Below, in pieces: positions 21,301 through 40,087 of a stretch of DNA of 64,000 nucleotides. The stretch comes from Octopus bimaculoides (taxonomy: Eukaryota), in NCBI RefSeq assembly GCF_001194135.2, contig NC_068995.1, positions 35,789,235 to 35,853,234 of the forward strand. The letters run 5' to 3'. Each line of letters starts with the position of its first letter. Position 1 is the stretch's first letter. The translations under genes were made by a program, and so were the position numbers. The notes under the pieces were generated by a model. The model worked only from the letters and a program-made list of their open reading frames with translations, ran no database searches and was not told where the DNA came from.

Positions 21301-22281
21301 ATGGAGATAGTGAAATGGAAAAATAAAGCAGTAGAACATGAAAAAATAAAAAATAGTTATGACAAGTGATGAGTCTTGGTTAGGGTTTCAAAAGATGCAT
21401 TCATTTATTACCAGTTGGAACAAAATCTGAAAGATAATGATAACTGACATAGTCGCAAAATGGTATGGTGGATAATATATACACATGAACGCATATACAC
21501 AAAAACAAACAAGCACATATGTATTAAAATGGTGGCTGTGATATGCATATACTACTTGGGCAAACCTACTTCCATGTATTTCTATCCAAAATGAAGCCAC
21601 CTATGAAGTTTAACTTTCAGTTCATGTCTACGAAATTCACTTGCAAGTCATTGGTCAACCCAGAGCTACAGTCAAAGACACTTGTCAATGTGATATGCAG
21701 TAGAAATCAACTCAGAATCATGTTGTTGAGAAGCAAACTTCTTACCACACAACCATCCCTGCAACTTACAATGGAATGAATAACATTTTGTCACCATGAA
21801 AGAGATTCAGAAATTCTCGGAACATTCTGTGCTGTGAATTGAAAGGGGGTGGGGTACTAAGGAAAGAAGTGTTGGTGTCCACCTTGCATTCGGCTTATCA
21901 ATTTGAAGCTCAATATGTAAAATGCAGATGATTTTGAAAGGCATGGGATAACTCATTTAACATACTGTTTAGTCTGTTATCTTTACTGAGTTACGTTATT
22001 TTATGTAAAATGTCATCTCTTCCAAAGACATGTTCGTATTAAGATATTCATCTTAATAAGTATGACATTTTCAATTGTTTCCACAGTCACATGCACTCAA
22101 CCAGTATTCACTTAATAGAGCCATTAGGTGATCCGCTCCTGTTACAGACAATCTCTTGTCAATACTTTGCTTCATTGCATGTAGAATTTGATAGGTCTCC
22201 AAACCTACTTTGAGACATTTTAGTTGATTCTGCTTGTAAGAAACTTTCCTCCTCACAAGAACTCATACACCCATCCCTTAA

Positions 22282-22937
22282 CCCTTTAGCATTTAAACCA
22301 GCCATATCCGGCCTTAATATTTTATCTGTGTTATGTTCTAACTTACCAGATTCAGAGTTTCATACCTAGACTACAATGTCATTCTAAAAAGAAACAGTCA
22401 CATCATTGAAATCTCAAAGTTACGAGTTAATGCATGATTAATTCAAAACAACCATCATCATCATCATTGTTTAACGTCCGCTTTCTATGCTAGCATGGGT
22501 TGGACGATTTGACTGAGGACCGGTGAAACCGGATGGCAACACCAGGCTCCAATCTGATTTGGCAGAGTTTCTACAGCTGGATGCCCTTCCTAATGCCAAC
22601 CACTCAGAGAGTGTAGTGGGTGCTTTTACGTGTCACCCGCACGAAGGCCAGTCAGGTGGTACTGGCAACGGCCATGCTCAAAATGGTGTACTTCATGTGC
22701 CACCTGCACAAAAGCCAGTCCAGGGGCACTGGCAACGATCTCGCTCGAAAATCCTACGAAGGCCAGTCAGGCGGTACTGGCAATGGCCACGCTCAAAATG
22801 GTGTATTTTATGTGCCACCCACACAAGAGCCAGTCCAGGGGCACTGGCAACAATCTCGCTCGAAAATCCTACGAAGGCCAGTCAGGCGGTGAATAAATAA
22901 ACATTGCATTTGACAAAGTAATCTGAATGCTAAAGGG
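22282..22937. mobile_element. TTAA-flanked MITE carrying a CAT-tailed RTE-related element (22455-22890)
   Basis: ttaa|ccctttagcatt ... aatgctaaaggg|ttaa. Confidence 0.88.
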
Positions 22938-23229
22938 TTAAACTTTTCATATATATCTATCTCAGCTCATCAAACTCCATAATGGGGAATTCCAGTCAAA
23001 CATCTTTCTCTTGTTGTGGATTAAAATTGTAAGTTTCTTGTTAAATTCTTCAGTGACTGCTTCACGAGAAATATCAAATCTGTGATGCATATTTAAACTG
23101 TATCTGTGCAGTTTCTACTATTCTCTAATGCCTTGACAGTATTTAATGCTGTTACCTCCTGTATACTCAGAGAGAGTGATTACATCTTAGATACCTCTTA
23201 CAATTCATACTTTCCCTCAGAAGCCTCCT

Positions 23230-23419
23230 CTTATCTTTTACTTGTTTCAGTCACTAAGCTGCAGGCATGCGGGGGAACTGCCTTGAAGAATTTTTAGTCA
23301 AATGAATCTAGTACTTTTTTATAAAACCCGGTACTTATTTTATCAGTCTTTTCTAGCAAACCTGTAAGTTACTTGGACATAAACATAACACTAATTATTG
23401 GTGACAAACACAGACACAA

Positions 23420-23480
<61 letters not shown>

Positions 23481-23640
23481 CTCTCTCTCACACAAACACA
23501 TATGATGGGCTTCTTGCAGTTTTTGTCTCATAACACTTTGGTCTATAGAAGATACTTGCCTAAAGTGCCATGCAGTGGAACTGAATTCAGAACCATGTGA
23601 TTGGGAAGCAAACTTCTTACTACACACTACGCCTGCACCT
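23230..23640 (-). mobile_element. SINE family A copy
   Basis: Similarity to 525-939. Confidence 0.8.
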
Positions 23641-24859
23641 ATCCTTCATCATTTTTGAAACTTTAATCATCTAACAAGATTTACAAAGCCAACCAGCAAT
23701 TTTGTTGGTCAATCTGAAGTTTACGCTTTGTTCTAATCACACCATTTACTCATTAACTTCTCCATGACTCATCCGGAGAATTCTTGAATTCGTTAGCTTA
23801 CAACATTCTGGGATACTCTAAATTCTTCATCTCTTACACTAAGTTCTTGATTGGATTAAGGAATTACGTAATGAATTGAAAATCATAATTCTTTAAAAAG
23901 TGTAAAATGTAATAGTTTGTAGAATCGCAAAAACAAAAACAAAAAAAATCAAAAAGAAGGAATTAAATGGAAAGAATATAAAAGAATAAAACATTTATGT
24001 AGAAAGAGTGAAAGTATGAGAGAATGAGAGCAAATTAATAGAGGAAAAGAAGAAAATGATTTCTGAAACAAGAGAGAAAGAAAGGAAAAGGAAGAATGAA
24101 AAGCTAAATGAAAGATAAACATTAAGAAAATCTTTCAGGATCAGAATATTGTAAATAAGAAATCATTAAAGGGGTTGCGCAGTTAGTTGAAGAGTGGTGG
24201 CATTGGTTATGGTGGTGATGGTATTGGTGGTAGTAGTGGTGATGGTGCTGCTGCTGTTGTTACTGATAGCATGGTGGCATTAACTGTACTGCTGCTGCTG
24301 CTGCAGTACCTGCTGGTGGTGGTGGCAGCAATAGTAGTAGTAGCAACAGTGGTGGTGGTAATGGTGGTGGTCATAATGATTTACAATAATTAACTTTACG
24401 TTGTCAAGGTCAATAGTGGGTAGCATTCACTATCTTATTATCAATGTGTGTGCACAAGAGAGACTGTTTATAATAGTATATGCCTATAGAAATGCACATA
24501 CATATATGCGCATTTAAAAGCAAATACATAGGTATCAGAAAAACGGATATGCTTTACAAAACAGACAAAAATTGTGTGCATCCCTGCATTTCACATTCAT
24601 CAAAAATTGCAACAAGATGAAGTACATTAGGATACAGACTATAAAAGCAAAGTTACTTTGTCGGTCCTGTAGACACACAAGTATATTAACCTTTTTTCAG
24701 ACACAATGTGTTTTGGTATGTGTAGCCAAAAAGACCAAAGTATTTTTTTCTGTTGAAATTGAAAATGATGGGTGCATGTAGAAAACAAAGGATAAATACC
24801 TAAAACTACTTTATAAGTATGTAAAACTATATATATCATATAGTTTTACATTACAGCTA

Positions 24860-25550
24860 CTGAAAGATGATCTCTGATTGGCTCTTACACTTCAAAACGT
24901 TTGTTGCATCAGGCCAATGGATCGGACTCAAAGTCCTTTCAGCTTGTATCACTTGAGCCAATCAATCAGCCTGAGTGTAGGAGTGATAATGGTTATGTCA
25001 ATGGTAAAACCTTCATAGAAACATTCCTAGTCAGTTAATTTATCACAATGTTATTTTAGTTGCTAGGGGTCTTCTTTTCAAAGCAACAGATTTTATCCAT
25101 TCTCCATCTGGATTGGTTAATTATAATGGAGATACAATGAATAATAAATATTTGCATGTTTTTATTCTTTTTTCTTTTTACCATATAATAATATCTACTT
25201 GGAGGATAACAGATAGTGCCAATGATCTTTGCAGGCTGTCCCAGACTGATAATGCTGATGTTCATGTTGATGTAATGATTATTTCCTTTAATCTGTATAG
25301 AGTGATTACTATAGGAAAATCATAGGCAATGAGCATGTTTGAGAAGAATGGAGTTCTGAGAAGAATGTATTAACCAGTGTTTATTGTATGTTTGGATGGA
25401 GTGAAAAAGTAACAAAGAGGAGATATTTTCATGTAATGAAACTGAGTGAAGGAGAATCAGGAACCACTGCAGAAGATGCAGAGAGTAGAAGAAATTTATG
25501 AGCAAGATGGTTGTAGTGTGTTGATGAATGAGGCTGACAATCAATTAGAA
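24860..25550 (-). mobile_element. Decayed Penelope-like element 3' relic
   Basis: Decayed peptides resembling the post-RT 'HP.H...PYSQFLRL' and 'IPLVLTFH...KH' regions, plus terminal cctgatg...aaacgttt motif. Confidence 0.45.
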
Positions 25551-25560
25551 AGGTATTTAA

Positions 25561-25763
25561 CCCTATATCATTTAAACTGGCCCAAATATTCAACCTGTCC
25601 AAACTGGTCAGATGCAGCATCTCACATACAACCTACAATATCATTCTAAAAATGAACAATCACATTATCAAAATCTTGAAGCTATAAGATAATGCATGAT
25701 TAATTTGAAATAATGTGAATAAATAATCATTACATTTGACCAAGTAATATGAATGCTAAAGGG
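25561..25763. mobile_element. TTAA MITE, same family
   Basis: ttaa|ccctatatcattt ... aatgctaaaggg; body matches the other copies. Confidence 0.8.
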
Positions 25764-26329
25764 TGAAGAATGTGGTCAATTATTCTTGTCTACATAGCAG
25801 CTGATCTATTCATATTTCAGCTTTGTAGAGATAGGCAACTAATCATAGCTGATTTTTTTCCCTGAGAGCTTAATTTTGGTGACGTTGCAGATATAAAGTT
25901 ACCATGGTAGATCATCAGATACTCAGAAATGTAACATTTGTAAGGTGTTAGTTGTGTGTTCTTTATGCATAAAGGAAGAGTAATGAAAATTTATATCTTT
26001 GTTGTAACCAATGAATGTGTGTTTATGATATTCAAGGACACTGGATTATGTTCCCACAGGAGAATCTTCAAAATATGTCTGGAGGTAGTGTAAAGCTGAT
26101 ATGAATGAAATCTTTTTACTGAAGTTCTCAAAAGCAAGGAATTTCAGGTTGATGACTTAGAAGTGTAGATCTTCAGAAGATCTATCTCTACAAGAACTAT
26201 ATTGGCTTCCATTGAAAAGGTAAAAGATACAGCAGCTATGAATGACTATTTTCATTACATCTAAAATGTTAGAAATGAAAATCAGTCTTTTATAGTGTTA
26301 AATAATCCTCAAGCAATTATATGTTTGTC

Positions 26330-26560
26330 TTTGCATACAAACATGCATACATATACATGTACAGCTTGTCATGAGGAGGTTGTAAGAGAAAAAGTGTTCA
26401 CAAGGGTAGATGTTGCCTCATTAGAGAGCTCCCATCTTAATGGATACCACTTAATAGGCATAACATTTTCAGTTCCCTATGGCTTCTCTTGAATACCTTA
26501 TTCCGAGTATTGCCTCCAACACTACTGTTGCTTGGTAACAGTAATAAAAGTAAACATAAT
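26330..26560 (-). mobile_element. RTE LINE 3' fragment
   Basis: Decayed 'RELKMLCLLSGI' resembles the RTE 'EMKMLRW..GV' segment. Confidence 0.5.
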
Positions 26561-28418
26561 GAAGTTCAGCTGTGAAAGTATTCAAAAATCTAAAAACAAA
26601 CAAATATACCCCATGGTGAAATAATTTTCTCATAGTTAGGAAGGGCAGCATTGCTTCCATTCACTAATATTTGAAATGAGTTTCAAAATATTTTTCAGAC
26701 AAGTTCAACTTTGAATAAAGGAGTTTCTATCAAGGAAGCAATTGTCAATTCTAAGTGTAAAGTCATTTCTTACATAAACATATAAAATATGAATTAATGA
26801 AACTACACAATGGCTAAATAAATATAAAATTAATTGAAATAAAGGTAAGAAAATATTTATGAAATAAAACTTAAATGAAGTTATGATAGGTAAGATGAAA
26901 CATTACTAATACCATGACAAAATATTTTTTTGTATGGAGCATAAAATTTTTAAAAAGTGGACAGTAAGGGACTGAAAATTAAAACAAGTAAACTTACAAT
27001 AAAGAGATTTAACTCATCAATTGAAGTCATCATACAATTACAATAGGTAGAATTTGTATTTGAAATTCCACATACTTACCATACAGCAAATAGCATGAAA
27101 AACATCTGCATTGCTTGAAACATGAAATGTACTACAGTCCAACAAATGATTCTAATACTTGCAATATATATCTATATTTGGACTGTTTGATAAATATCAT
27201 TTCCTCCACATTCAAAGTAAAGAAGATCAATTTTTAGCAATTAAAGTTGAATTCATTTGTGCAAGTCTTCGATATTTTTTTAATTTTATCTTTTATTTCC
27301 AATTTACTGATCATAGAAGTTGTTTTCATTCCTCTTTACTTAAAAATTCAGAATTATGTAAAAAAACATATTTATAGTATTAATAATTTGTATTTATAAC
27401 TATAATAGAAAATTTTGTAGAAATCTGACAAAAATTAAAGCAAAAAGCATTTATTTACAAATATACTTAAAATCTACCTGAAACACTGAATGCAGAGAGT
27501 TAATTCTGAAGTTTAAATTAACAGAATTGTTGCCACAGGATTAAGAAACTTAAAGTAAACAAAACTAAAAACAATGATATAATTTTATTGATACAGTTTG
27601 TGAAAATATTGTCAATCTGGTTTAAACTGGAAGTTTATTAATTTGTAAGGGCTCATACAAAAACCCAAAACACAGTGTCTTCTTTTGTTTAATTACAATT
27701 ATTATGAGAGTAAAAACTTAAAATGCTAATTCTAAAAGAAATGCAATACAAAAAAACAAAAAACTGTACTAGCTCTTGTTAGAAATATAAACGACCACTT
27801 CATGGAACATACGAGACTGACTAATTAATAGGGAAGTGACCGTATCATGTATCCATTAGTTTGATTTGTGACTTTGCCTGTTGTCAAACGCCTGAACAGA
27901 ATCTCTCTGCATTATTGTCAACCAAATGTATATATTTATTTGTATTATTGTTATCAACCAAATAACTCATGTCTATTTATATGCTAGATGTGTTTGTTTC
28001 TAATTCGAAGATAATTAATTAATACTCTTAGTAAATGCAAGTACAATAAAATAGTCTTTATTGTAGAACCAAAATGGCTAAGTGAATGGTTTAGAGAACA
28101 ACTAATAGATTTTGAGTTCAGTTCTGTTGGAGACGTTTTGTTGTAGATGACATTACAATGTGCTGCTGAAAATATTGCTCTCAGAAGAGGCTGTTAGCAT
28201 TTACAGTCAAAGATAGATAGTATAACTTTAACTGGACAAGTCTAAATCAGTAAGGTTAGTATCAGATCATTTGTCTATAGTACCAGCCATGGATCATCAC
28301 GTTATCTGTTCTCAACAGTTTAATTGTCTAATGCCATAAAACCAAAGTTAAACTCTCAAAAGCCTAGCAAGAAAACACACTTCACAGAGTAATTTCCTCA
28401 TGAATTTCACCTTTGAAC

Positions 28419-28419
<1 letters not shown>

Positions 28420-28490
<71 letters not shown>
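28420..28490. repeat. (AAT)n microsatellite
   Basis: Pure aat run. Confidence 0.98.
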
Positions 28491-28492
<2 letters not shown>

Positions 28493-30300
28493 TAGGAAAA
28501 ACATGCAATTGTAACATATAACTAACTAAAATAGAAAATAATAACTAGATTGGCCTGCAATTCTGGAGAATTTGTGGGATTTGAAAAGTCTGTTTAAAAG
28601 ATATATCTCTTGTCCAGTTAATGTATTTTTCCAGTCACATGTCATCTGCTGTAAAGTCATTGTTAAACATAGAAGTTGCTCAAGCAGCAATGTTACCAGT
28701 AGCAGATTGTAATGTTATGCCAGTGACTAACCAACACATGGTGGAATTCTTGACACTATTAGAACAGTGCACATAACAGTTGAATGGAGATGAAGGCAAT
28801 AGAAGATTGTGTTGTGTAACTGGGCATTGTATTGCCCTCATTGCATTTTCATTTGTAGCTTTTTATTATACACTCTGATTCTTATTTGATAACCAAGTAC
28901 ACAATGATCAAACAGAAATTCCACTCCAGAGCAATGATAGTTTACACAGCATTAACAACCTATTGTGTTTCAGACTAACTTGACTTCAATATTTTTATGG
29001 CTGCTTTCACACTTCAAGTGAGGTCTGTAACAACTTAACAATAAATTACATCAAACTGAGTCAAGTACCTTTTTTCAGAAATACATAGTGAGATGGCAAG
29101 AGAAATTAGTGTGTTTAGCTGCTTAAATATGATTATTTACATGTATTGGTAGTTAAAAAATTGTGCATCAGTGAGTATATGTAATATGGTGTGCTCCAGC
29201 TAAGAAACAATGCTTTGGGACACAAAGCTGGTATAAGAATTTTAAGGAAAATAAAGTGGGAAAACAGGATAGGTAACAGAAATGATATATTTCCTGATGA
29301 TTGGAAAAAGTAAATCAGTAAATTCAGAGAGATGAAGTTTTAAGCAAGAAGGTGGCAAGATGCTAACTAATAATTTACTAATTAAAAAGCAGATACCACA
29401 TTTACTTGGACATTGGATCTCTTATTCAGCATCAATATTCCATCATCATCATTAACTTTAAACAGTGGTAAAGCTTTGATGGAGCATAAATAAACTTAGC
29501 ACAGAGTACACAGTTGTATATTTTACTAAATCAAAAACCACTACATGAGAAATACTATTTCTTAAGTAGATATGAAGTTGCAAGGTTAATAAAATGTGGT
29601 GCTGTGAAGGGCATGTCTTTATCAAGAGCATTAGTAAATAAAGAACATCCCATTTAAATTGAAAGTGGATTTTGAAGTCAACCAAAAACTTAAAGGTTGA
29701 TGTAGATTAACATTTCTTGCTTTTATAAAAATTATAAAAACAGTAAGATTATTAAGGATGACAAAAATTTCAAACAAGTCCATTTTCACTCAATTTTGTG
29801 AACTTCTATAAAAACTTAGAAGTTAGTAATCATATTTCAGCATATGACAAGAGACAGCAGTTGTAGGTTGTGAGAGAATGGTGACATTCCTTTAAAAGTT
29901 TGCAATATCATGGGTACAGCCAATTTGTAGATTAATATATATATATATTCTGTTTTCTTTTGTTTTTTAAAGACATAAATATCACAAATATGTTAGTAGA
30001 ATATTAGTCTCTTTGCTTGAAGAAGTGAAATGAATTGCTGTATTTGATGGCATACAAGACACACACTGTTTCCTTCCAATGTCTCCAAAAATTATCCCAG
30101 ATCTTTTATGCAAAGCTGGGCCTATATTACATGCATCGATATGCTAGAAACTGTTTTTCATAAATATGCACAGCTAGAATTGAGATGCATCTAATTATAC
30201 CTACATGTCCTTTATGCCATCAAATATGTTACGTTCATTTGTAGTGGAGTTGCATGTGTATACACAAACACATATATACCTACATGTGGTTTATTTTAAG

Positions 30301-31497
30301 CTATAAACGTGTCACGATTTCTACAGAACTTTGCTCAAATAAAAGATTGTCATTACAATGAACAGTCATGGATGACTGCTTTGATACCAAATTGTAATTT
30401 GAAGCAAATAAAGATCTGTCCGAATCATATAGTGTTGGTCGGGAATTAGATGTCTGGCAAGAGTGTTGTATATGGATGGGTGCAGTTGCCATAGTGTTTG
30501 CTGTGAAACCAATGTTGTATGTAGAAGACGTGTTTTGACAGCAATATCTCCAGCAGCAGATTGTAAAGTTGTGCCAGTGGCTAGTTACCACACTATTAAT
30601 TTCTTGGCATTGATAAGCATGAAGAACAGCACATGTAATAGACTTGAATAGAGGTAGAAGTAAAAAATAGAGGATTGTATAACTTGGCTTTGTATTGTCC
30701 TCATCACAGAAATAGGAAATGGCAATGTAAAATATCAAAGGCAGATATGTCAACAGCCATACTATAATGTGATACTTTGATATTGAGAGCAATCCTGCAT
30801 ATCTTTTGTATTCTTTACTACTCAGAGTAAGGATGTGATCATTGTTTTGTATCCGTCGGTTTAGGCATTGATAATAAATAAGTAAACAAATAGTGATGAA
30901 AACACAGTTATTCCAAAGTATTCCAACAAATAGCAAGAATGTGGAACTGTAGTAGCAGAAAAACAAGCATGTGTAATCAAACAACACCCATCCCATCTGA
31001 GAAGAGAATCCAATGATAAAAGAACCATTCCAAACAATCACCATGAGAGCAATGACATTTTTCTTGTGCATATGAAACTGCAAGTCAAGCGGCCGTGACA
31101 GCCTCACAGAACTGTCTGCTGTCAACCAGAGCAAAGAAAGTGCTGAGGCTGTTGATGCTGTAATAAGAAGGCTTTCTGACAGAAAACAATCAATAGAACG
31201 AATTTTGCGATATTCTATATATATTGTTTTCACAACGCCAAACAACCCTATGAGGGCATCAGCAACAATCAAACTTCGAACAAAAACTAATGAAGGGCTT
31301 TGACCTCCACTAGCATTTTTTGACTCAATCAGAACAAAACTGTTCAAAATAAAAGACAAGGATCCGAGAACAGCAAATAAAATTTGAATGACAATCAGGT
31401 TATTATCCTCTGGCCACTCCAAAGTCTTCAAATTGGAGCAGTTGGAGAAGATCTTTGAGTAGTTATATCTACAACGCATCTGCATGACAGTGGTCAT
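30301..31497 (-). CDS. Intronless class A (rhodopsin-like) orphan GPCR, 398 aa, MECA/GPR119-like, with degenerate activation motifs
   Basis: Uninterrupted ORF with an in-frame upstream stop and seven hydrophobic segments. N1.50 (ILNSF), SLIVAD (D2.50), C3.25, 'RPL' in ICL2, W4.50 followed by 'SQMGW', Y5.58, P6.50, and helix-8-like 'AYQCQEIN'. Confidence 0.93.
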   Translation of the reverse strand: MTTVMQMRCRYNYSKIFSNCSNLKTLEWPEDNNLIVIQILFAVLGSLSFILNSFVLIESKNASGGQSPSLVFVRSLIVADALIGLFGVVKTIYIEYRKIRSIDCFLSESLLITASTASALSLLWLTADSSVRLSRPLDLQFHMHKKNVIALMVIVWNGSFIIGFSSQMGWVLFDYTCLFFCYYSSTFLLFVGILWNNCVFITICLLIYYQCLNRRIQNNDHILTLSSKEYKRYAGLLSISKYHIIVWLLTYLPLIFYIAISYFCDEDNTKPSYTILYFLLLPLFKSITCAVLHAYQCQEINSVVTSHWHNFTICCWRYCCQNTSSTYNIGFTANTMATAPIHIQHSCQTSNSRPTLYDSDRSLFASNYNLVSKQSSMTVHCNDNLLFEQSSVEIVTRL

Positions 31498-31766
31498 GAG
31501 TAGTGAGACCCAAACAGATTAGATTTATCAGCATAAGTATTCCTCCCAACACTGGGTCTGTGCAACACATTTTATATTTGCTTTTGGTTCAGTTGCAATC
31601 TGGAGAGTCTAGTTAAGGCATTAGCATGAGAAAGAAGATTAAAAAAAACCCCAGAAAACCTGGATGGATTTTCTTTACAATGAATGGTCAAATATACCTT
31701 AAAATCAATCCAACATACAGTTTCACTACACACACAGCATACTAACACTACACTCTTACATATCAT

Positions 31767-31823
<57 letters not shown>

Positions 31824-31932
31824 NNNNNNNNNNNNNNNNNNNNNNNNNNNNNNNNNNNNNNNNNNNNNNNNNNNNNNNNNNNNNNNNNNNNNNNNNNNNN
31901 NNNNNNNNNNNNNNNNNNNNNNNNNNNNNNNN

Positions 31933-31978
<46 letters not shown>

Positions 31979-31985
31979 TCTAGGC

Positions 31986-32232
31986 CAGTCGTCTCTAAAC
32001 ACATTCCTATATTTCACAGACAATCCCTGCCATTTTAATGTGACATTAAAAAAAAAAATTATTATTTAGAGAAAATTTATTCATTTTAAAAAGTACTTTG
32101 AAAATGGTGAATTCCATATTTTTACAAAATAAATTTCTATCAAATTTCATTAAAAGACACTTTATCTTGTAGAACTCCATAAATTTATAATGGAACCCTG
32201 GAGTTCCTTGGAAACCAATTTAGGAAACACTG
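31986..32232. mobile_element. Charlie-type hAT MITE
   Basis: Termini cagtcgtctctaaac / taggaaacactg. Flanks ttctaggc and tcctagac resemble an NTCTAGAN TSD. Confidence 0.7.
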
Positions 32233-33356
32233 TCCTAGACCACACACAAAAAAAGCTACTCTTCATCTGAAAAACAGGTCTTCACTGATCAAGACTCCAG
32301 AATAACTGATCCATTTTTAAACTGTTAATGTTTTTGGTTCCTTTAGCACTGTATGAAGAACACTAAGAAAGTTGCAATTTTTGATAAGCAAAACTTTTGT
32401 TCTTTTCATACACAAAAAAAAAATGCTATCATTACTACAAATGACAAAATATCAAGAGAGTTTGAATGTTATTGCTCTTGATGTAATTGTAATGGTAGTC
32501 AAAACGTTAACTGCTAGTCATTGTGTTGCTGTCACCGACTGTTCAATGTGGTAGTTGTCAGCAGCTGTCTGTGTCCATTCACCGTCGAACTACTGTCTCT
32601 CAACGCTCTCTCAAAGCTCTCTGTTAAGTAGTCAAGGTGTGCTGAATTTATACTGATGGATGGACTCATAAAAAAGTGTGCCAAAAGATGAAATCGTTAC
32701 TGGAGCTTACTCCATATGAACTTGTGAGTGATTGTTCAGATTTTGTTGATCATATAGGCAATATCCTAGTGAATCATGACATCAGGGGTATTGAAGTAAG
32801 TGCTGAACATTCCCACTACAACAATAAGGATAATAAAATTTACTCCTATCAGCAGACTGAAGAAATAAGAATGAAGGGGGAAGTCTTACATGTTTCTATT
32901 CATGAATTATATGCCACAGTATACCTTCAGCTCCATCAAAAGGCCCAGTCCTTGGAGCAGTGTAATGGTTTGTGTACTTCAATGACTGAGATCTATGCCA
33001 GTAGAGTGCAAGGTCGTGGTAAGGCTTCTTATGCTGGATAGGTCAAAAGATAGAGGCAAGACTAATATGGAGCCCTTCTCCCCAGAGGTAAAAATGGGTT
33101 TGCACAGGGCCAACACCACAAACCTGGAAAGAGGCATTTACAGAAACATCGATAGCAATTAAAACCAACAAGACTTTGGAGAGGAAGGCCTTCCTTTAGA
33201 GACAAATAGTGATGGGTGGGCCACACTTTACAGTCCAGAGTTGAGAACAATGAAAAGCCATCCTAGGCCTATGCTCCATAGAGAATGGAAGGCTATGGGA
33301 AACAAGTAATATTTTTGCTATGTTTCCTTCCCAACTAACCAAGAGGTAAAGTTTAA

Positions 33357-33536
33357 CTCTTTAGCATTTAAACCAGCCATATCAGGCTCAAATATTCAAC
33401 TAGTTTTATGTTCACACTGGCATGATCCAACCTCTCACACTTACCCTACCATGTTATTCTTAAAATAAACAATCACGTCATCAAACATGAACAAATAAGC
33501 ATAACATTTGACAGGATAATCTGAATGCTAAAAGGG
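33357..33536. mobile_element. TTAA MITE, same family
   Basis: ttaa|ctctttagcattt ... aatgctaaaaggg. Confidence 0.8.
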
Positions 33537-34176
33537 TTGAAATGACCTTCTTTAAAGATTAACTAACAGAAGAAGAACATTTGACAAAGTACCAACATCT
33601 ATATTTACCTCTTTGAATGCAAAGACACACACACACATATATAACAATCTTAAAGCTCTCCACACACATAAAAAGCTACACATGCACACATGTGCGCAAA
33701 CACACATACACACTCACGCATGCACACACATGTGCACATACTATAATTCATACATATACACACGTACCCTATTGTTACAGCGACATTACACTTTTTAACC
33801 TTTATGTGCAGCATGCACATCGTATTTCCTTTTTTTGCTACATCATCATTGCATTTAATATATTTCATCCACTCGCATGGTACACATGCTGCATGCATCT
33901 CATTGCACATATACAGCTTATTGTTGCATACATATATCACTCCTGTTGTTACTGCTGGCCTGTATGAGGATACCAGTTTGTATATAATGTGTCCATACAC
34001 ACGAATAAAACAGTAAAGATATAAGTTGGAAAAAAGAGTGGATGTGTTTGTGTGCGTGTGCATGAATGCAGGTGTGTGTGCATGTGAAAAAGTAAGAGTA
34101 AAAATATGCTTTTGTCTGTAAGAAACTGAAAGAGAAGGAAACAGAGTGTGTAGTTGTGGGTTAGTGGATGTGTATA

Positions 34177-34217
<41 letters not shown>

Positions 34218-34617
34218 TAAAAGAATGATGCGAAGCACACAAGAGTGTGTGGTGTGTGCATATTTGTGTATAGTGTATATGTGTGTGTGTGTGTGTGTGT
34301 ATGTACACTTGTACATGTATATACATACAGACACGTGTGTATATATATTTTACACACGTGTTTGTATATATGTATATGTGTATGTTTGTGAAAGAGAGAG
34401 GAGACATTTAATGATTCCATCAGAGGAAAGCACTATGGGTCAACTTAATACAGACAGAAATGGCAATTGGTTGATTAAACTGAACAAAAGGAGTTGTCCC
34501 TTGCCTGAGACTAAGGTTGACATGTTGAGAGGATGAAGATGTTGTATGGGCCACCCCCCCCCCCGGCTCCCTTGAGAAAAGCAGAAGCATCAAAACTCCA
34601 TTAATGGACATATACAT

Positions 34618-34652
<35 letters not shown>

Positions 34653-36080
34653 NNNNNNNNNNNNNNNNNNNNNNNNNNNNNNNNNNNNNNNNNNNNNNNN
34701 NNNNNNNNNNNNNNNNNNNNNNNNNNNNNNNNNNNNNNNNNNNNNNNNNNNNNNNNNNNNNNNNNNNNNNNNNNNNNNNNNNNNNNNNNNNNNNNNNNNN
34801 NNNNNNNNNNNNNNNNNNNNNNNNNNNNNNNNNNNNNNNNNNNNNNNNNNNNNNNNNNNNNNNNNNNNNNNNNNNNNNNNNNNNNNNNNNNNNNNNNNNN
34901 NNNNNNNNNNNNNNNNNNNNNNNNNNNNNNNNNNNNNNNNNNNNNNNNNNNNNNNNNNNNNGGAGGGGAGTGGGATAAGGTGGGATGGGGGGGGAGGGGG
35001 TGATATTTGTTGTGACTGTAAATGGTGTAGTGGTGGTGATAACAATTGTTGAATTGTTGCTAAATAGGAGAATCAATGAAACAGAGAAAGGGGAAGAAAT
35101 GAAAGAGAGAGGGGGGAAGAAAGACATAGAGGGAAAGAAAGAGAGAGAGAGAGAGGGAAAGAGACAGAGAGAGAGAGAGAGAGAACAGACACACACAAAC
35201 ATACATGTATTGGTTGTGAAACTACGTAAGTGACTCAGGGGCAGAGAGTTTTGCTTAACAACATATATCAATCGAGTTCTTTTTCTTCTGTTTGTATAAC
35301 ACGAACACACACATACACACACGCATATTCATTACAGGCTTTCCATCTTTGTCTACAAAATCCGTTTGCATGGCTATGGTCTGCCTAGGGCTATAGCAAG
35401 AGACATTTGGCCAAAGTGCCATGCAATGGGATTGAACCCAGTACCATGTGGTTGGGAAGAAGACTTCTTACCACACTATCACACAGCCATGCCTCTGTGT
35501 GTGTGTGGGGGGGGATCTTTTTTAAAATGGGGGCCACATTTTTCATTAACGAAACACTTTGAAACTTGGAACACTGGTAGAATGTGTCATATAAAACATC
35601 TTTTTCTCTTAGTCTTCTTAAAAAAAAAAGAAATCCATAAGTTATTCCATGTTAAAGTTGTCGTATTTCTGTAATTTCAACCAATCACTGACGTCCATTC
35701 AGCCGATATACATTAAGTGCCAACTACATAAACACACGATTCTGAAACAATTAACCCTAACCNNNNNNNNNNNNNNNNNNNNNNNNNNNNNNNNNNNNNN
35801 NNNNNNNNNNNNNNNNNNNNNNNNNNNNNNNNNNNNNNNNNNNNNNNNNNNNNNNNNNNNNNNNNNNNNNNNNNNNNNNNNNNNNNNNNNNNNNNNNNNN
35901 NNNNNNNNNNNNNNNNNNNNNNNNNNNNNNNNNNNNNNNNNNNNNNNNNNNNNNNNNNNNNNNNNNNNNNNNNNNNNNNNNNNNNNNNNNNNNNNNNNNN
36001 NNNNNNNNNNNNNNNNNNNNNNNNNNNNNNNNNNNNNNNNNNNNNNNNNNNNNNNNNNNNNNNNNNNNNNNNNNNNNNNN

Positions 36081-36126
<46 letters not shown>

Positions 36127-36799
36127 ACGCGCGCACATTTATGCTTGTAGTACCAAAGCTGCAAATCTGTTAGTGTGTGTGTGTGTGTGCCCATGCTTTC
36201 TTATTGTATCATTATCTCTAGTTTCACTATCTCTGTTACATTATTTCTTATGTGTCTGTATGTGTGAGAGAGAAAGAAAATGAGAGAGAGAAAGAAAGAG
36301 AGAGAGAGAGAGAGTGAAAGTAACCTGTCTAGGAGTGCAATAACTCTAAAAATAAACAGCATAAAAGAGAATTTTAGTCCTGCTAAACAATGTCTTTATA
36401 ATTGGCAGCACAATAAAATGCAGCCAGTCCTTGATTTTATGATGTTAAGGGCATAGATTAGATAAGATAAACATAAACTTGCCTAAAATCATGTAAGAAA
36501 GGCCTAGCCAAATAACATCAGTGAATTTTCCAATTCTTTCTAGAATGTGTTAAAACATTCCAAAAACATCAAAGAGGCTATATTATGTTCTAACCATAAA
36601 CGAGGAAGCAGAGAAATGTCAGGCTTGTATCACTGCCCACCTTAGAATTTCTATATTTACAACATTCACTCATGGAGTTTTTTTCCCAAGAAATATCTTT
36701 TATTTATTTCATAATTAAGAGTGGCAAACTAGCAGAGTCATTAGCACACAACACGAAACACTTGGCGGCATTTCATCCATCTTCACATTCTGAGTTTAA

Positions 36800-37104
36800 C
36801 CCATAAACTGCTGGGATTTTGCTGTATGTAACACGAACTGCTGAGCCTATTTTGGGTAAAGATCAACATCGATCTATCACTCGAAAAAAATACTCAGTGT
36901 TTCTTAACACCTTCTGTGATTGGCTACACTGTTTCTGGGGTGAAAGGGTATCATGTGTATACATTATACATCATCAAAATTAGGTCAGATCATGCCCTAC
37001 TTCCGTGGCCACGAACATGGCCTGTCACACTGTCACATTGGCCACTGAGGTGGCCTATCACACTGTCACGTTGGCCACTGAGGTGGCCTATCGCAGTTTA
37101 TGGG
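36800..37104. mobile_element. piggyBac-type MITE inserted inside a SINE, with internal 33-bp tandem repeat
   Basis: Perfect 12-bp TIR cccataaactgc / gcagtttatggg, flanks TTAA / ATAA. The host SINE sequence resumes on both sides. Confidence 0.85.
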
Positions 37105-37388
37105 ATAAATTCCAAGGAGGCCAACTTTGTCATTCATCCTTTTGGGTTTGACAAACTAAGTACGAGTTGAGCACTGGGGGGTCGATATATTCGACTTACC
37201 TACTTGCCTGAAATTGTTCACCTTGTGTCAAAATTTGAAATCAATATCTTATATCTGAAATTAATAATGGACTGTCTTTACAATCACAAATCATAGACAG
37301 GCATTTTCAGTTTTCTGTTCCTCTGTACACAAACAAACTTATATCTGCTTAATATAAATTTTAACCATTACATATCCATACAATCTAC

Positions 37389-37469
37389 CTGCTGTTCTTT
37401 TTCTTGTTCCTCCCACAACCTATCTCCGAGCTCCAGGATTTAAACACATGGAGTTATTTCCCATATTTG
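37389..37469 (-). other. Candidate non-coding (5' UTR) exon, possibly of the GPCR
   Basis: Strong acceptor ttttatgttcatttttcag and donor CAG|GTAGAT. Stops in all three frames. Splice-site pattern only, no transcript evidence. Confidence 0.25.
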
Positions 37470-38419
37470 CTGAAAAATGAACATAAAATTTCTGGCTTGT
37501 ATTTTTCCACACAAATTTATTTCTAGTTCACTTTAGTAGTGCTAGCTATTTTTAGTCATGTTCTATGTATTAATATATTGATAATAACTAACTTATTGAT
37601 TTTATGTGTATTTGGTGATTCTGAATTATCTAATCTCTAAATGATTCTGTTTTCCTACATCAATAAATGTATGATCTTGTAAATTTACTTTATTCTTCAC
37701 TATTTTAGCACATATGGGAAAAGGTTATGTTCCACTGAAGAGGTCAAGATGTGACTGAATCTGCCTTGGGTTGTCTTCTCTTACTAACTAAAACATAATA
37801 ATAATAATAATATGTCATAGAGATGTGTGTGTGTGTGTGTGTGTGTGCATGTGTGTATGTGTATTACCTGATTTAAAACAATATCAATTTCTTTTCCATA
37901 CAACATTACTCTCTGGAACTCAGTTGGAACAGTTTGAAACTAGCATTAATCTACTTCAACCACAACCAATTATCATCTTGGGCAAGTATCTTCTACTATA
38001 GCCCTGGGCTGATCAAATCCTTGTGAATGGATTTAGACGGAAATTGAAAGAAGCCTAGAGAGAGAGAGAGAGAGAGAGGGGTGTTTGTTTGTTTGTTACT
38101 GGCTAAAGGGAAAGCCAGCTCTGCCCCACCTCAGACTAAGAAAAAAATTAACGAATCAAGCTGTTTAGACTAAATCATATGATTATTGCTATCATAACAT
38201 TGTTATTTCTGACTAATTATTTCTCTTTAACACATAGCTTCCTTCGTTTCCTTCAGTGATTTGTAATAAGTTTATTGGGTGTTCTCACTGAGTCACCTCA
38301 AATTACATTACACCCAGTTAATACCACATTACAGTTTAGTCTGTCTCACTTCACATCACTCAACAATTAATGTCTCAGGTTCCTTCCTAAATAATAAACT
38401 ACACTAATCATTTTGTTAT

Positions 38420-38790
38420 TTTTGCAGCAGCTGTGGTGGTGTGGAGGTGGCGGTGGTGACAGCTACAGTTGCAATGCTGGTTGTTGTTGTTGTTGGTGGN
38501 NNNNNNNNNNNNNNNNNNNNNNNNNNNNNNNNNNNNNNNNNNNNNNNNNNNNNNNNNNNNNNNNNNNNNNNNNNNNNNNNNNNNNNNNNNNNNNNNNNNN
38601 NNNNNNNNNNNNNNNNNNNNNNNNNNNNNNNNNNNNNNNNNNNNNNNNNNNNNNNNNNNNNNNNNNNNNNNNGAGGCGGCAGCGGTGGAGGAGGAGGAGG
38701 AGGCGGCAGCGGTGGAGGTGGCGGTGGCAGCGGTGGTGGTGGTGGTAGTGGTTAGGGGTAATGCTAGTTGTATGTGGTAGCAGTGGTGGT
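38420..38790. repeat. GGT/GGC/GTT trinucleotide low-complexity tract spanning an N gap
   Basis: Direct reading. Confidence 0.9.
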
Positions 38791-39696
38791 GCTGGTGGTA
38801 ATGACAACAGCAGTAAGAGATATATCATTAATATTCTCTGTGACCATTCAGGTCATTTGTAGTGTTAGAGATGGAAATAAAAACAACCTTTCCACACAGT
38901 AACTTTAATAATATATCATCAGTTTAGTACAGAAGTGACTTTTAGCATGTATGCTATTAGCAGCAGGAACACCACATTGTTCTGCCTCTATCTGCATTTC
39001 AGATCTTGGGCAAAGTGCAAATCATATATCAGTGTTGTCATCATCATCATTATTATTATTGTTATTATTATCGTCATCATTGGCACCACAGTTTATCATC
39101 ATCATCATCATTTTACTCCAACTGTCCATACTGGCATGGGTTAGACAGGCCTGCTCATATAGATGGATCAGTTGGTGGGGAGTGGACATTATTTTGCTTG
39201 TGTTTCATTTTAGGGGCTGGATTTCATTTCATTTTTGGGGCTGCATGCTCTTCCTAACACCAACCATTTTACAGAATGTACTGGCTGCTTGTTTTCATGC
39301 CAACAGAACTAGAGAAATGTCATGTCTTTGACAAAAACTTAAAGGGACTCAAACCTAAAAGGTAGAGCAATGAAAGAGGTAGAAAAGGAATAAGAGTATA
39401 CTGATGACATGGGATAACAACATGACAGACAGTTCAGGAGGGGCGGGTTAACTGAGCACAAGTGGTCTAATGTAGCCACCTACACTTAGATGATGAGAGG
39501 GTCCGATGTGGTCTGAGTACTGAGATGGAAAAGGGGTGGGTGCTGTACCAGAAAACTGCACAAAAGAGTGATGGGGTGAAGGTCAAAACAGGTAGAGAGA
39601 TAAACAGATTAGAAGCGATGCACAGATTTACTGATATCTTAAGTCACTTCAGAGCAAGACAAAGTGTAAATTCAAAAGAGGAGGGTGCAAAAGAGT

Positions 39697-40087
39697 GTTG
39701 TTGTTGTTGGCACTCCATCGCTTACAACGTCGAGGGTTCCAGTTGATCTGATCACCGGAACAGCCTGCTCGTGAAATTAACGTGCAAATGGCTGAGCACT
39801 CCACAGACACGTGCACCCTTAACGTAGTTCTTGGGGAGATTCAGCATGACACAGTGTGAAAAGGCTGGCCCTTTGAATTACAGGCACAACAGAAACAGGA
39901 AGTAAGAGTGAGAGAAAGTTGTGGTGAAAGAGTACAGCAGGGTTCGCCACCACCCCCCCTGCCGGAGCCTCGTGGAGCTTCAGGTGTTTTCGCTCAATAA
40001 ACACTCACAATGCCCGGTCTGGGAATCGAAACCGCGATCCTATGACCGCGAGTCCGCTGCCCTAACCACTGGGCCATTGCGCCTCCA
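39697..40087 (-). mobile_element. Young tRNA-derived SINE family D with (AAC)n tail
   Basis: Head ggaggcgcaatggcccagtggttagggcagcggactcgcggtcataggatcgcggtttcgattccc; CpG-rich. Confidence 0.85.

What the first reader, a model, noticed from the sequence alone, without database searches (positions are those of the whole stretch)
30301..31497. Intact orphan GPCR with all three class A activation switches degenerate
Seen: the 398-aa ORF keeps the structural anchors (N1.50, D2.50, C3.25, W4.50, Y5.58, P6.50). However DRY reads DSS (LTADSSVRLSRPL), CWxP reads TYLP, and NSxxNPxxY reads KSITCAVLH. Established: R3.50, W6.48 and NPxxY are central to canonical G-protein coupling. Inference: an ORF this long without lesions in a TE-dense region suggests selection, so this may be a G-protein-independent, decoy/scavenger or accessory receptor of the MECA/GPR119-like branch.
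Basis: partly seen in the sequence, partly recalled or inferred. Interest (0 to 1): 0.75.

Follow-up and report, generated by a model that had tools for sequence, protein, structure and literature searches.

The report
Octopus receptor with rewired activation switches
This is an intact, selectively maintained octopus gene for a class A 7TM receptor, and its "broken" activation motifs are the conserved signature of an apparently undescribed receptor family shared by molluscs and at least one annelid.

Summary
The 398-aa ORF is real. It lies on the minus strand at 30301-31497, in Octopus bimaculoides chromosome CM046615.1. It is a class A 7TM protein (Pfam 7tm_1, 41.6 bits; AF2 7TM core mostly pLDDT >90). 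DRY reads DSS, CWxP reads TYLP and NPxxY reads CAVLH, as reported.

It is not decaying. Eight intact orthologues (three octopods, five decapodiform-like sequences) give dN/dS of 0.07-0.15. All keep the odd motifs.

An exhaustive profile search found about 40 representative relatives. Named members come from Lottia, the chiton Liolophura and the annelid Owenia. The family shares a replacement motif set:
- R3.50 in 1/42, W6.48 in 0/42, Y7.53 in 2/42 (His in 25).
- K/R7.45, K/R2.60 and E/D3.29 in 42/42.
- Usually an acidic residue at 6.40.
- A C-terminal T-x-L motif that resembles a PDZ ligand.

Sequence and fold place the family beside the lipid/adenosine (MECA) receptors and GPR3/6/12/119. The adenosine-contact residues are absent, so the database name "adenosine receptor A2b-like" is not supported.

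The function is untested. I favour a ligand-sensing receptor with a rewired charged core that does not use the canonical class A G-protein switch. G-protein coupling through the rewired core remains a strong rival.

The parts
30301..31497 (-). Single-exon coding sequence of a 398-aa class A (rhodopsin-like) 7TM receptor. ATG is at 31495-31497 and TAG at 30301-30303.
   Evidence: ORF list. Pfam 7tm_1 at 41.6 bits. AF2 gives 7TM plus helix 8, pTM 0.74. The exact protein is on record for O. bimaculoides GCA_001194135.2.
31108..31116 (-). Codons D128-S129-S130, in place of D-R-Y (3.49-3.51).
   Evidence: Alignment to M5 and LPAR1. DS[SC] in all 8 cephalopod orthologues. Position 3.50 is C, S or T in 35/42 family members and R in 1/42.
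30739..30750 (-). Codons T250-Y251-L252-P253, in place of C-W-x-P (6.47-6.50).
   Evidence: Alignment to LPAR1. [TS]YLP in all orthologues. In the family, 6.48 is Y in 24, F in 6 and W in 0 of 42; P6.50 is present in 41/42.
30619..30645 (-). Codons K285-S-I-T-C289-A290-V-L-H293, in place of N7.45-S-x-x-N7.49-P7.50-x-x-Y7.53.
   Evidence: Alignments to LPAR1 and GPR12. Conserved in the orthologues. In the family, K/R7.45 is in 42/42, N7.49 in 4/42, P7.50 in 5/42, and 7.53 is H in 25 and Y in 2 of 42.
31258..31260 (-). Codon D80 (2.50), the acidic residue of the class A sodium pocket. It is the proposed partner of K285.
   Evidence: D2.50 is present in 39/42 family members. S3.39 (S118) is present in 27/42 and S7.46 in 33/42.
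31174..31230 (-). Stretch carrying K90 (2.60; codon 31228-31230), C104 (3.25) and E108 (3.29; codon 31174-31176). These are invariant charged residues in the outer half of the helix bundle.
   Evidence: K/R2.60 in 42/42, E/D3.29 in 42/42, C3.25 in 32/42. The family motif N-C-F-L-x-E-S-L opens TM3.
30304..30321 (-). Codons E393-I-V-T-R-L398, a conserved C-terminal motif resembling a class I PDZ ligand (S/T-x-hydrophobic-COOH).
   Evidence: 5 of 6 residues are identical between octopus and the Sepia-like orthologue, against 14/82 identical in the rest of the tail. [ST]-x-[LVIMF] ends 21/38 non-cephalopod family members.
30290..30295 (-). AATAAA polyadenylation signal, 5 nt after the stop codon.
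   Evidence: Read from the sequence. Identical in O. sinensis and a third octopod.
31600..31650 (-). Candidate 3' splice site of the coding exon: a polypyrimidine tract, CTTAAC, then AG at 31609/31610 and at 31600/31601. This is an inference only.
   Evidence: Conserved in three octopods. In a decapodiform genome, the alignment to the Sepia-like contigs (inferred to be transcripts) stops at ...CGACAG|GATTTTGA, 47 nt before the ATG.
20301..41497 (-). Host gene. A TUDOR-domain gene model spans at least this interval on the same strand, so the receptor gene sits inside it, probably in an intron.
   Evidence: Gene tables for O. bimaculoides (1117-aa product, PF00567) and O. sinensis (666 aa). I did not map its exons in the window.

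Best explanation
This is a functional, single-exon gene of Octopus bimaculoides. It encodes a non-canonical class A 7TM receptor.

**Shown:**
- The protein belongs to a discrete family that appears undescribed. The family is found in molluscs (cephalopods, Lottia, a chiton) and in the annelid Owenia. It branches beside the lipid/adenosine (MECA) and GPR3/6/12/119 receptors.
- The DRY, CWxP and NPxxY microswitches are replaced family-wide, so the replacement was probably already in place in the family's ancestor.
- The replacement set is D-[C/S]-x with a basic residue at 3.53; C-[Y/F]-L-P; and [K/R]7.45-S-x-x-[S/C]-A-x-x-H7.53.
- The family usually also has a basic residue at 6.38 and an acidic one at 6.40 (His in cephalopods).

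**Inferred mechanism:**
- The protein is a cell-surface ligand sensor. It keeps conserved N-terminal glycosylation sequons, C3.25 plus an ECL2 cysteine, invariant K2.60 and E3.29, and a conserved ECL2.
- The invariant Lys/Arg at 7.45 reaches D2.50 and fills the class A sodium pocket as a tethered cation.
- Charged residues at 6.38, 6.40 and 7.53 replace the hydrophobic and tyrosine locks.
- R3.50, Y5.58 and Y7.53 are all missing. So the receptor most likely does not activate G proteins by the canonical class A route.
- It would instead signal through partners that bind its conserved cytoplasmic face and its conserved C-terminal T-x-L motif (PDZ scaffold, arrestin-like).

**My probabilities:**
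- Real, selected receptor gene: 0.95.
- Member of a conserved spiralian family with an ancestral alternative motif set: 0.85.
- Non-canonical, G-protein-independent output: about 0.45.
For: **ORF and fold.** ORF and Pfam match. AF2 gives a 7TM fold, with pLDDT mostly above 90 in the 7TM core and pTM 0.74.

**Selection.**
- Eight intact orthologous ORFs exist.
- NG86 dN/dS is 0.07-0.15, with P from 4e-6 to 1e-35.
- dN is 0.26 of the flanking substitution rate, P=1e-9.
- There are no indels in the CDS, while the flanks carry many.

**Family.**
- The profile search found 31 representatives with E<1e-30 and 60 with E<1e-10. Canonical DRY/CWxP/NPxxY receptors appear only from E of about 1e-12.
- Named members are from Lottia, Liolophura and Owenia.
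- Motif statistics: K/R7.45 42/42, K/R2.60 42/42, E/D3.29 42/42, D2.50 39/42, R3.50 1/42, W6.48 0/42, Y7.53 2/42, D/E6.40 29/42.
- The octopus protein keeps 43 of the 50 family positions that are at least 70% conserved.

**MECA affinity.** By sequence and by fold.

**PDZ-like C-terminus.**

**Transcription.** Full-length contigs of the cuttlefish-like orthologue occur in 34 index blocks (the 10 contigs shown come from 10 runs). These include SRR23936168, SRR23936177 and SRR23936179, whose accessions fall within or next to the range of a Sepia esculenta larval RNA-seq project (PMC10571815, PMC10442824). The project assignment is an inference from accession numbers.

**Sodium pocket.** Position 7.45 lines the pocket next to D2.50 (PMC6037435).
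Against: - No functional datum exists for any member of the family.
- Losing the class A motifs does not prove loss of G-protein coupling. To my knowledge, other GPCR classes couple without them. CXCR6, CCR7 and CCR10 carry R7.45 (PMC6037435), and to my knowledge they are G-protein-coupled.
- The conserved basic 3.53 and 6.38, acidic 6.40 and His7.53 could form a substitute G-protein switch.
- The conserved cytoplasmic loops across paralogues fit a shared transducer such as a G protein just as well.
- The K285-D80 contact is inferred from generic numbering. The tools returned no model coordinates.
- The PDZ reading rests on a short motif. Four of the eight nearest canonical relatives I inspected by eye also end in such a motif.
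- No full-length transcript contig of the octopus protein itself was found.
- Most family members come from unnamed assemblies, so the taxonomic span rests on four named lineages.
Confidence: 0.55

Rival explanations
1. The receptor still couples to G proteins through a rewired core. The family would still activate heterotrimeric G proteins. It would use R/K3.53, R/K6.38, D/E(H)6.40 and H7.53 as a substitute polar switch, much as non-class-A GPCRs use their own networks.
For: - All its nearest relatives are G-protein-coupled receptors.
- ICL1 (S-K-F-x-S-G-G), R74 (2.44), the DK motif at the ICL2/TM4 boundary and the Y-R-T-x-Q-I start of helix 8 are conserved across paralogues and phyla. That points to one shared cytoplasmic partner.
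- The ICL2 proline typical of class A (D-x-x-x-x-x-x-P-L) is kept in 29/42.
- R7.45 occurs in CXCR6, CCR7 and CCR10, which to my knowledge couple to G proteins.
Against: R3.50, Y5.58, N7.49 and Y7.53 are all absent family-wide. From established knowledge, these residues build the active-state G-protein pocket in class A. Also from my own knowledge, the characterised vertebrate class A receptors that naturally lack R3.50 (ACKR1, ACKR2, C5aR2) do not signal through G proteins.
Confidence: 0.33
2. One reading: a decoy or scavenger receptor. It would bind and internalise a ligand of a canonical receptor without signalling.
For: The altered DRY box resembles the atypical chemokine receptors and C5aR2 (established knowledge). 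The C-terminal tail is rich in Ser and Thr.
Against: - To my knowledge, the known decoys are recent offshoots of ligand-defined families and keep CWxP and NPxxY.
- Here the whole TM6-TM7 core is replaced, across a multi-member family spanning two phyla.
- The pocket residues K2.60 and E3.29 are invariant among paralogues. That does not look like tracking of several different ligands.
Confidence: 0.07
3. A ligand-independent 7TM protein. It would be a self-occupied or constitutive receptor, or an accessory or trafficking subunit of another membrane protein held in a PDZ scaffold.
For: - The most conserved block in the family is TM2 to TM4 plus ECL2: N-C-F-L-x-E-S-L, and W-N-x-x-F-x-x-G-F-x-P-x-M-G-W followed by C-x-F-F. 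It is the same in all paralogues. That fits a built-in structural element better than diverse ligands.
- Its relatives GPR3/6/12 are constitutively active (established knowledge).
- The C-terminus resembles a PDZ ligand.
Against: An invariant buried K/E pair and conserved disulfide cysteines fit one shared small ligand equally well. There is no direct evidence either way.
Confidence: 0.12
4. A chance ORF, or a young pseudogene or retrocopy drifting neutrally inside an intron of the TUDOR gene.
For: The gene is a single exon nested in another gene. No full-length octopus transcript contig was found.
Against: - The chance of such an ORF in the window is about 2e-8.
- Eight intact orthologues exist across octopods and decapodiform-like species, with saturated dS between the two groups and dN/dS of 0.07-0.15 within them.
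- The AATAAA signal is conserved.
- There is probable transcript evidence in cuttlefish larvae.
Confidence: 0.01

Closest known systems
MECA-cluster and allied class A receptors: S1PR1-3, LPAR1, CB1/CB2, adenosine A1/A2A/A2B, MC4R, GPR3/6/12, GPR119
   Same: - They are the best matches by sequence. For the single protein, LPAR1 scores 8.8e-7. For the family profile, S1PR1 scores 4e-22, followed by CB2, GPR3, LPAR1 and A2B.
- They are also the best matches by fold, with TM-score 0.70-0.82 on the target.
- Both have 7TM plus helix 8, N1.50, D2.50, W4.50 and P6.50, a short ICL3 and cysteines after helix 8.
- E3.29 is shared with the S1P receptors (alignment).
   Different: - R3.50, W6.48 and NPxxY are missing, and Y5.58 is not conserved.
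- 7.45 is Lys/Arg and 7.53 is His.
- The adenosine-contact positions are not met: 6.55 is I258 rather than N, 7.42 is P282 rather than S, and 7.43 is L283 rather than H.
- R3.28 of the S1P and LPA receptors is Ser here and Pro in most of the family.
- The C3.25 and ECL2 cysteines are present. To my knowledge, the lipid receptors lack them.
Atypical, non-G-protein class A receptors (ACKR1-4, C5aR2)
   Same: They too have a natural alteration of the DRY box under purifying selection.
   Different: - They are not close relatives. None appears in the top 60 rows listed in the sequence searches or the top 50 rows of the fold search.
- To my knowledge, they keep CWxP and NPxxY and are vertebrate offshoots of ligand-defined families.
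- This family has replaced all the switches and spans at least two phyla.
Chemokine receptors with a basic residue at 7.45 (R7.45 in CXCR6, CCR7, CCR10; H7.45 in most others)
   Same: A basic or imidazole side chain sits at 7.45 in the sodium pocket next to D2.50 (PMC6037435).
   Different: Those receptors keep DRY and NPxxY, and to my knowledge they couple to Gi. Here K/R7.45 is invariant across the family and comes with the loss of N7.49, W6.48, R3.50 and Y7.53.
Nearest canonical invertebrate relatives found in the deep search (P0060, P0061, P0064, P0070, P0076)
   Same: 31% identity over TM1-TM5. They have the same MECA-like best hits. Some also end in S/T-x-hydrophobic.
   Different: They carry intact D-R-Y, C-W-x-P and N-P-x-x-Y. 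BLAST finds no alignment across TM6-TM7. So the family's divergence is concentrated in the half that carries the activation switches.

Membership tests
Class A (rhodopsin-like) GPCR, Pfam PF00001 7tm_1 | Profile match above the curated threshold | tested here: met
   41.6 bits against a cut-off of 30.5, covering residues 52-280.
Class A (rhodopsin-like) GPCR, Pfam PF00001 7tm_1 | Seven transmembrane helices plus helix 8, with fold similarity to solved class A receptors | tested here: met
   AF2 helices at 32-62, 68-95, 106-134, 145-168, 185-217, 228-264 and 274-321; pTM 0.74. All 50 best Foldseek matches listed are class A receptors.
Class A (rhodopsin-like) GPCR, Pfam PF00001 7tm_1 | Helix anchors N1.50, D2.50, W4.50 and P6.50, plus the C3.25 and ECL2 cysteines | tested here: met
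   N52, D80, W156, P253, C104 and C177.
Class A (rhodopsin-like) GPCR, Pfam PF00001 7tm_1 | Activation microswitches D/E-R-Y, C-W-x-P, N-P-x-x-Y and Y5.58 | tested here: not met
   The octopus protein has DSS, TYLP and CAVLH. In the family, R3.50 is in 1/42, W6.48 in 0/42, N7.49 in 4/42, P7.50 in 5/42, Y7.53 in 2/42 and Y5.58 in 9/42. It is therefore a structural member of the superfamily and a functional outlier.
Adenosine receptor (the database name is 'adenosine receptor A2b-like') | Adenosine-contacting residues N6.55, S7.42 and H7.43 (established from A2A structures) | tested here: not met
   By offset from P253 and K285, 6.55 is I258, 7.42 is P282 and 7.43 is L283. Adenosine receptors are not the top sequence hits.
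Lysophospholipid (S1P/LPA) receptors | The R3.28 plus E/Q3.29 headgroup pair | tested here: inconclusive
   E3.29 is present and is E/D in 42/42. Position 3.28 is Ser here and Pro in 21/42 of the family, and never Arg. S1PR1 is the best profile hit, but at only about 19% identity.
Lysophospholipid (S1P/LPA) receptors | Activation by S1P or LPA | not testable with these tools
   Needs a ligand assay.
Atypical / decoy class A receptors | Ligand binding and internalisation without G-protein activation | not testable with these tools
   This is a functional definition. Only the altered DRY box is shared.
The spiralian family defined here (provisional) | Signature positions: S-K-F-x-S-G-G in ICL1; R2.44; D2.50; K/R2.60; N-C-F-L-x-E-S-L; D-[C/S]-x; W-N-x-x-F-x-x-G-F-x-P-x-M-G-W; [C]-[Y/F]-L-P; [K/R]7.45-S; H7.53 | tested here: met
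   The octopus protein keeps 43 of the 50 positions that are at least 70% conserved in 38 non-cephalopod members. The changes are A58E, C77I, N103D, P166S, Y187F, T239I and T297C. Profile scores are 131-227 bits for the closest 30 representatives.
The spiralian family defined here (provisional) | C-terminal [S/T]-x-hydrophobic motif | tested here: met
   -V-T-R-L in octopods and -V-T-H-L in decapodiform-like species. The motif ends 21/38 other members.

The most novel reading that the evidence does not exclude
A clade of class A receptors spanning at least molluscs and annelids has dismantled the universal class A activation machinery: the sodium pocket, the R3.50 lock, the W6.48 toggle and the NPxxY/Y5.58 tyrosines. 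In its place it has a tethered cation (invariant Lys/Arg7.45 on D2.50) and a charged 6.38/6.40/7.53 network. It is anchored by a PDZ ligand. This would be a distinct transduction mechanism, either a new way to engage G proteins or G-protein-independent signalling, with a shared unknown ligand class read by the invariant K2.60/E3.29 pair.
Probability: 0.3. Interest if true: 0.75.

Novelty: new variant of a known kind. Interest (0 to 1): 0.55.

Why it matters
R3.50, W6.48 and NPxxY are treated as near-universal parts of the class A activation mechanism. Here is a family that has lived without all of them under strong purifying selection, in at least two phyla. It kept D2.50 and fixed a basic residue beside it. 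That makes it a natural experiment on which parts of the mechanism are dispensable and what can replace them.

The result also corrects an uninformative automatic name ("adenosine receptor A2b-like"). It gives cephalopod and mollusc neurobiology a defined orphan family to deorphanise. The testable handles are K7.45-D2.50, H7.53, K2.60/E3.29 and the C-terminal T-x-L.

For the single octopus gene taken alone, the result is modest. It is an already predicted protein of unknown function.

Tried and rejected
1. **Pseudogene or chance ORF.** Rejected by the eight intact orthologues and the dN/dS values.
2. **Adenosine receptor.** Rejected on the contact residues and the hit order.
3. **Opsin or retinochrome-like protein.** The lysine is at 7.45, not 7.43, and no opsin appears among the listed hits.
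4. **Word-index homologue searches.** The single protein found only 3 clusters. The two profile searches returned 4 proteins each and missed a family that the exhaustive search had found. So I could not get names or taxa for most members. Only Lottia, Liolophura and Owenia are named.
5. **Octopod Logan contigs as transcript evidence.** Contigs L013-L015 end in the genomic GT microsatellite, so they are genomic DNA.
6. **Splicing of the 5' UTR.** Comparing the Sepia-like contigs with a decapodiform genome stops at a plausible AG acceptor. Non-coding divergence could explain that as well. Inconclusive.
7. **Conserved synteny with the TUDOR gene in decapodiforms.** tblastx finds only the receptor shared between L002 and the window. 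Inconclusive.
8. **Pfam scan of six other long ORFs in the window**, to locate TUDOR exons or TE proteins. No hits.
9. **Literature.** Five searches and a reading of Ritschard et al. 2019 (PMC6408891) turned up no description of this family or its motif set.
10. **Coordinates of the AF2 model.** None were returned, so the K285-D80 distance could not be measured.
Full report
**1. The observation**

The window is Octopus bimaculoides chromosome CM046615.1 (GCA_001194135.2), around 35.81-35.83 Mb. An ORF of 398 codons runs from 31497 down to 30301 on the minus strand. At 35% GC the chance of 398 open codons is about 1.6e-13 per start, or about 2e-8 for the window. No other ORF in the window is comparable once gaps and simple repeats are set aside.

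The product matches Pfam 7tm_1 at 41.6 bits against a cut-off of 30.5.
- N52 = 1.50
- D80 = 2.50
- C104 = 3.25
- W156 = 4.50
- Y208 = 5.58
- P253 = 6.50

They also confirm the three substitutions:
- D128-S-S for DRY
- T250-Y-L-P for CWxP
- K285-S-I-T-C-A-V-L-H293 for NSxxNPxxY

Four points need correcting:
- The gene is on the minus strand.
- Y5.58 is not conserved among orthologues.
- The "TE-dense" setting is only loosely true. Intra-window repeats cover 15% of the window and none lie within 26-33 kb.
- "Degenerate" turns out to be the wrong word.

**2. The gene is maintained by selection**

The exact protein and its relatives were traced to DNA. This gave eight intact ORFs of 398-399 codons:
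- O. bimaculoides.
- O. sinensis (XP_036365804, "adenosine receptor A2b-like", 97% identical).
- A third octopod, from genomic reads.
- Four closely related cuttlefish-like sequences.
- A more distant decapodiform-like genome contig.

Octopod and cuttlefish-like proteins are 51-52% identical.

Nei-Gojobori dN/dS values:

| Comparison | dN/dS |
|---|---|
| O. bimaculoides vs O. sinensis | 0.125 |
| Either vs the third octopod | 0.105-0.107 |
| Within the decapodiform-like group | 0.07-0.15 |

Binomial P values run from 4e-6 to 1e-35. The 7TM core is tighter (0.07-0.14) than the tail in octopods (0.23-0.40).

NG86 may inflate dS, so I also compared dN with the substitution rate of the aligned flank (5.2%). 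13 nonsynonymous changes are observed against 49 expected, P=1e-9. The CDS has no indels, while the flanks have many. An AATAAA signal 5 nt after the stop is identical in three octopods.

All eight sequences keep the following:
- D-S-[S/C]
- [T/S]-Y-L-P
- K-[S/A]-I-x-C-A-[V/I]-L-H
- the N-terminal N-x-S sequons
- the post-helix-8 cysteines
- the last six residues E-[I/M]-V-T-[R/H]-L

**3. Transcription**

Full-length contigs of the cuttlefish-like orthologue were found in 34 index blocks (the 10 contigs shown come from 10 runs). Their 5' ends converge within about 40 nt. Three of these runs (SRR23936168, SRR23936177, SRR23936179) have accessions within or next to the range of PRJNA947123. The neighbouring runs of that project are published as Sepia esculenta larval RNA-seq (PMC10571815, PMC10442824).

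That is good but indirect evidence that the orthologue is transcribed. For the octopus protein itself, only genome records carry the exact sequence, so octopus expression remains open.

**4. It belongs to a family, and the odd motifs are that family's signature**

An exhaustive profile search of 1.84 billion representatives found 187 proteins with E<=1e-3. Of these, 31 score E<1e-30 (131-227 bits) and 60 score E<1e-10. Canonical receptors with intact DRY, CWxP and NPxxY appear only from E of about 1e-12.

Named members:
- Lottia gigantea XP_009059354
- the chiton Liolophura sinensis XP_064607425
- the annelid Owenia fusiformis CAH1784437

The rest come from unnamed eukaryotic assemblies.

In a 42-sequence alignment (A2) the key positions read as follows:

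| Position | Residues in 42 sequences |
|---|---|
| 2.50 | D in 39 |
| 2.60 | K/R in 42 |
| 3.25 | C in 32 |
| 3.29 | E/D in 42 |
| 3.49 | D/E in 37 |
| 3.50 | C in 20, S in 12, T in 3, R in 1 |
| 3.53 | R/K in 30 |
| 5.58 | Y in 9 |
| 6.38 | R/K/H in 30 |
| 6.40 | D/E in 29 (His in the four cephalopod rows) |
| 6.47 | C in 24 |
| 6.48 | Y in 24, F in 6, W in 0 |
| 6.50 | P in 41 |
| 7.45 | K in 25, R in 17 |
| 7.46 | S in 33 |
| 7.49 | S in 17, C in 6, N in 4 |
| 7.50 | A in 20, P in 5 |
| 7.53 | H in 25, Y in 2 |

The octopus protein keeps 43 of the 50 positions that are at least 70% conserved in the 38 non-cephalopod members.

The best-conserved block runs from TM2 to ECL2. It contains R-S-L-C-x-x-D, N-C-F-L-x-E-S-L, and W-N-x-x-F-x-x-G-F-x-P-x-M-G-W followed by C-x-F-F. 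ICL1 (S-K-F-x-S-G-G) and the start of helix 8 (Y-R-T-x-Q-I) are also conserved.

A C-terminal [S/T]-x-[LVIMF] ends 21 of the 38 non-cephalopod members, mostly as T-x-L. In cephalopods the last six residues are 5/6 identical, while the rest of the tail is 14/82 identical.

**5. Relatives by sequence and fold**

The family profile hits S1PR1 (4e-22), CB2, GPR3, LPAR1, S1PR3, A2B, GPR12 and A1/A2A.

The AF2 model has mean pLDDT 76.8, mostly above 90 in the 7TM core, and pTM 0.74. Its best structural matches are S1PR1, LPA1, A1, A2B, CB1/2, GPR119, GPR3 and MC4R, with TM-score 0.70-0.82 on the target.

The adenosine name is not: 6.55 is Ile, 7.42 is Pro and 7.43 is Leu.

The nearest canonical invertebrate relatives (such as P0060) align at 31% identity over TM1-TM5 but not over TM6-TM7. 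The family's divergence therefore sits in the half that carries the switches.

**6. How it probably works**

*Shown:*
- It is a selected 7TM membrane protein with class A topology.
- It has a conserved outer-half pocket and a conserved cytoplasmic face.
- It has a motif set that replaces the class A microswitches.

*Inferred:*
- **Tethered cation.** D2.50, S3.39 and S7.46 are kept, but N7.45 is invariably Lys or Arg, and N7.49 and W6.48 are gone. Position 7.45 lines the Na+ site next to D2.50, and His7.45 coordinates Na+ in simulations of chemokine receptors (PMC6037435). I infer that the basic side chain pairs with D2.50 and takes the ion's place.
- **Charged lock.** Basic 6.38, acidic (or His) 6.40 and His7.53 put a charged network where class A has the hydrophobic 6.40 lock and the Y7.53/Y5.58 water bridge.
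- **No canonical switch.** With R3.50, Y5.58 and Y7.53 all absent, the canonical active-state G-protein pocket cannot form as it does in other class A receptors (established knowledge). I therefore favour non-canonical output through the conserved cytoplasmic face and the PDZ-type tail, at probability about 0.45.
- **Main rival.** G-protein coupling through the rewired core has probability about 0.33. Conserved loops across paralogues suggest one shared transducer. R7.45 occurs in CXCR6, CCR7 and CCR10, which to my knowledge couple to G proteins. Other GPCR classes couple without these motifs.
- **Other rivals.** A ligand-independent or accessory role (about 0.12) and a decoy role (about 0.07) cannot be excluded.
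- **Ligand.** The invariant K2.60/E3.29 pair and ECL2 suggest either one shared ligand chemotype or a built-in structural element. E3.29 recalls the S1P receptors, but R3.28 is missing.

**7. Novelty and verdict**

The protein is already predicted in public annotation under an automatic name. I found no paper describing the family or its motif set.

I rate it a new variant of a known kind. It is a structural class A receptor family whose activation machinery has been replaced and then conserved.

The functional guess is plausible but untested, and the decoy flavour has no support. Interest is moderate (0.55). The family is a clean natural experiment for GPCR mechanism, but receptors lacking individual motifs are known and there is no functional evidence yet.

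Noticed in passing
window about 20301-41497 (-), and beyond; L016 and L001: The receptor gene lies inside a TUDOR-domain gene model (PF00567) on the same strand. The model gives a 1117-aa product in O. bimaculoides and a 666-aa product in O. sinensis. The nesting therefore predates the split of the two species.
   Followed up: partly
window 31766-31990, plus N runs at 1789, 9315, 11682, 19045, 34653, 35763, 38500, 41080 and 47196: There are ten assembly gaps (2121 N in all), and those I inspected are flanked by di- or tetranucleotide microsatellites. The (CA)n array with a 109-nt gap sits only about 270 nt upstream of the receptor's ATG. The orthologous microsatellite ends the genomic contigs of a third octopod.
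   Followed up: partly
window about 13786-13942, 22453-22737, 45599-45796, 56220-56417, 58499-58691, 60149-60332, 61397-61795, 61824-62001: A short interspersed element of about 190 bp (72-86% identity between copies) occurs at eight or more places in the window. It also occurs several times in the O. sinensis locus. It looks like a SINE.
   Followed up: no
CDS 30301-31497 versus its flank (L001 11201-15400): Synonymous divergence between O. bimaculoides and O. sinensis (dS 0.11) is about twice the substitution divergence of the adjoining non-coding DNA (5.2%). This may be NG86 bias from transition excess or a local effect. I did not resolve it.
   Followed up: partly
L002 10100-10210; L004 700-780: The alignment between the cuttlefish-like contigs and a decapodiform genome ends at ...TCATCGACAG|GATTTTGA, 47 nt before the ATG. 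That suggests a 5'-UTR intron. Octopods have a conserved polypyrimidine-CTTAAC-AG element about 105-115 nt before the ATG (window 31600-31650).
   Followed up: partly
P0060, P0064, P0070, P0073 (deep-search hits): Several of the nearest canonical (DRY/NPxxY) invertebrate relatives also end in S/T-x-hydrophobic (-TVL, -TNV, -TNF, -SMV). The PDZ-type tail may therefore predate the motif-replaced family.
   Followed up: no
P0034, P0036, P0039, P0046 and others (family members): Some family members carry very long (400-800 aa), low-complexity, Ser/Thr/His-rich C-terminal tails that still end in -DTRM. The cephalopod orthologues have a short tail of about 80 aa.
   Followed up: no
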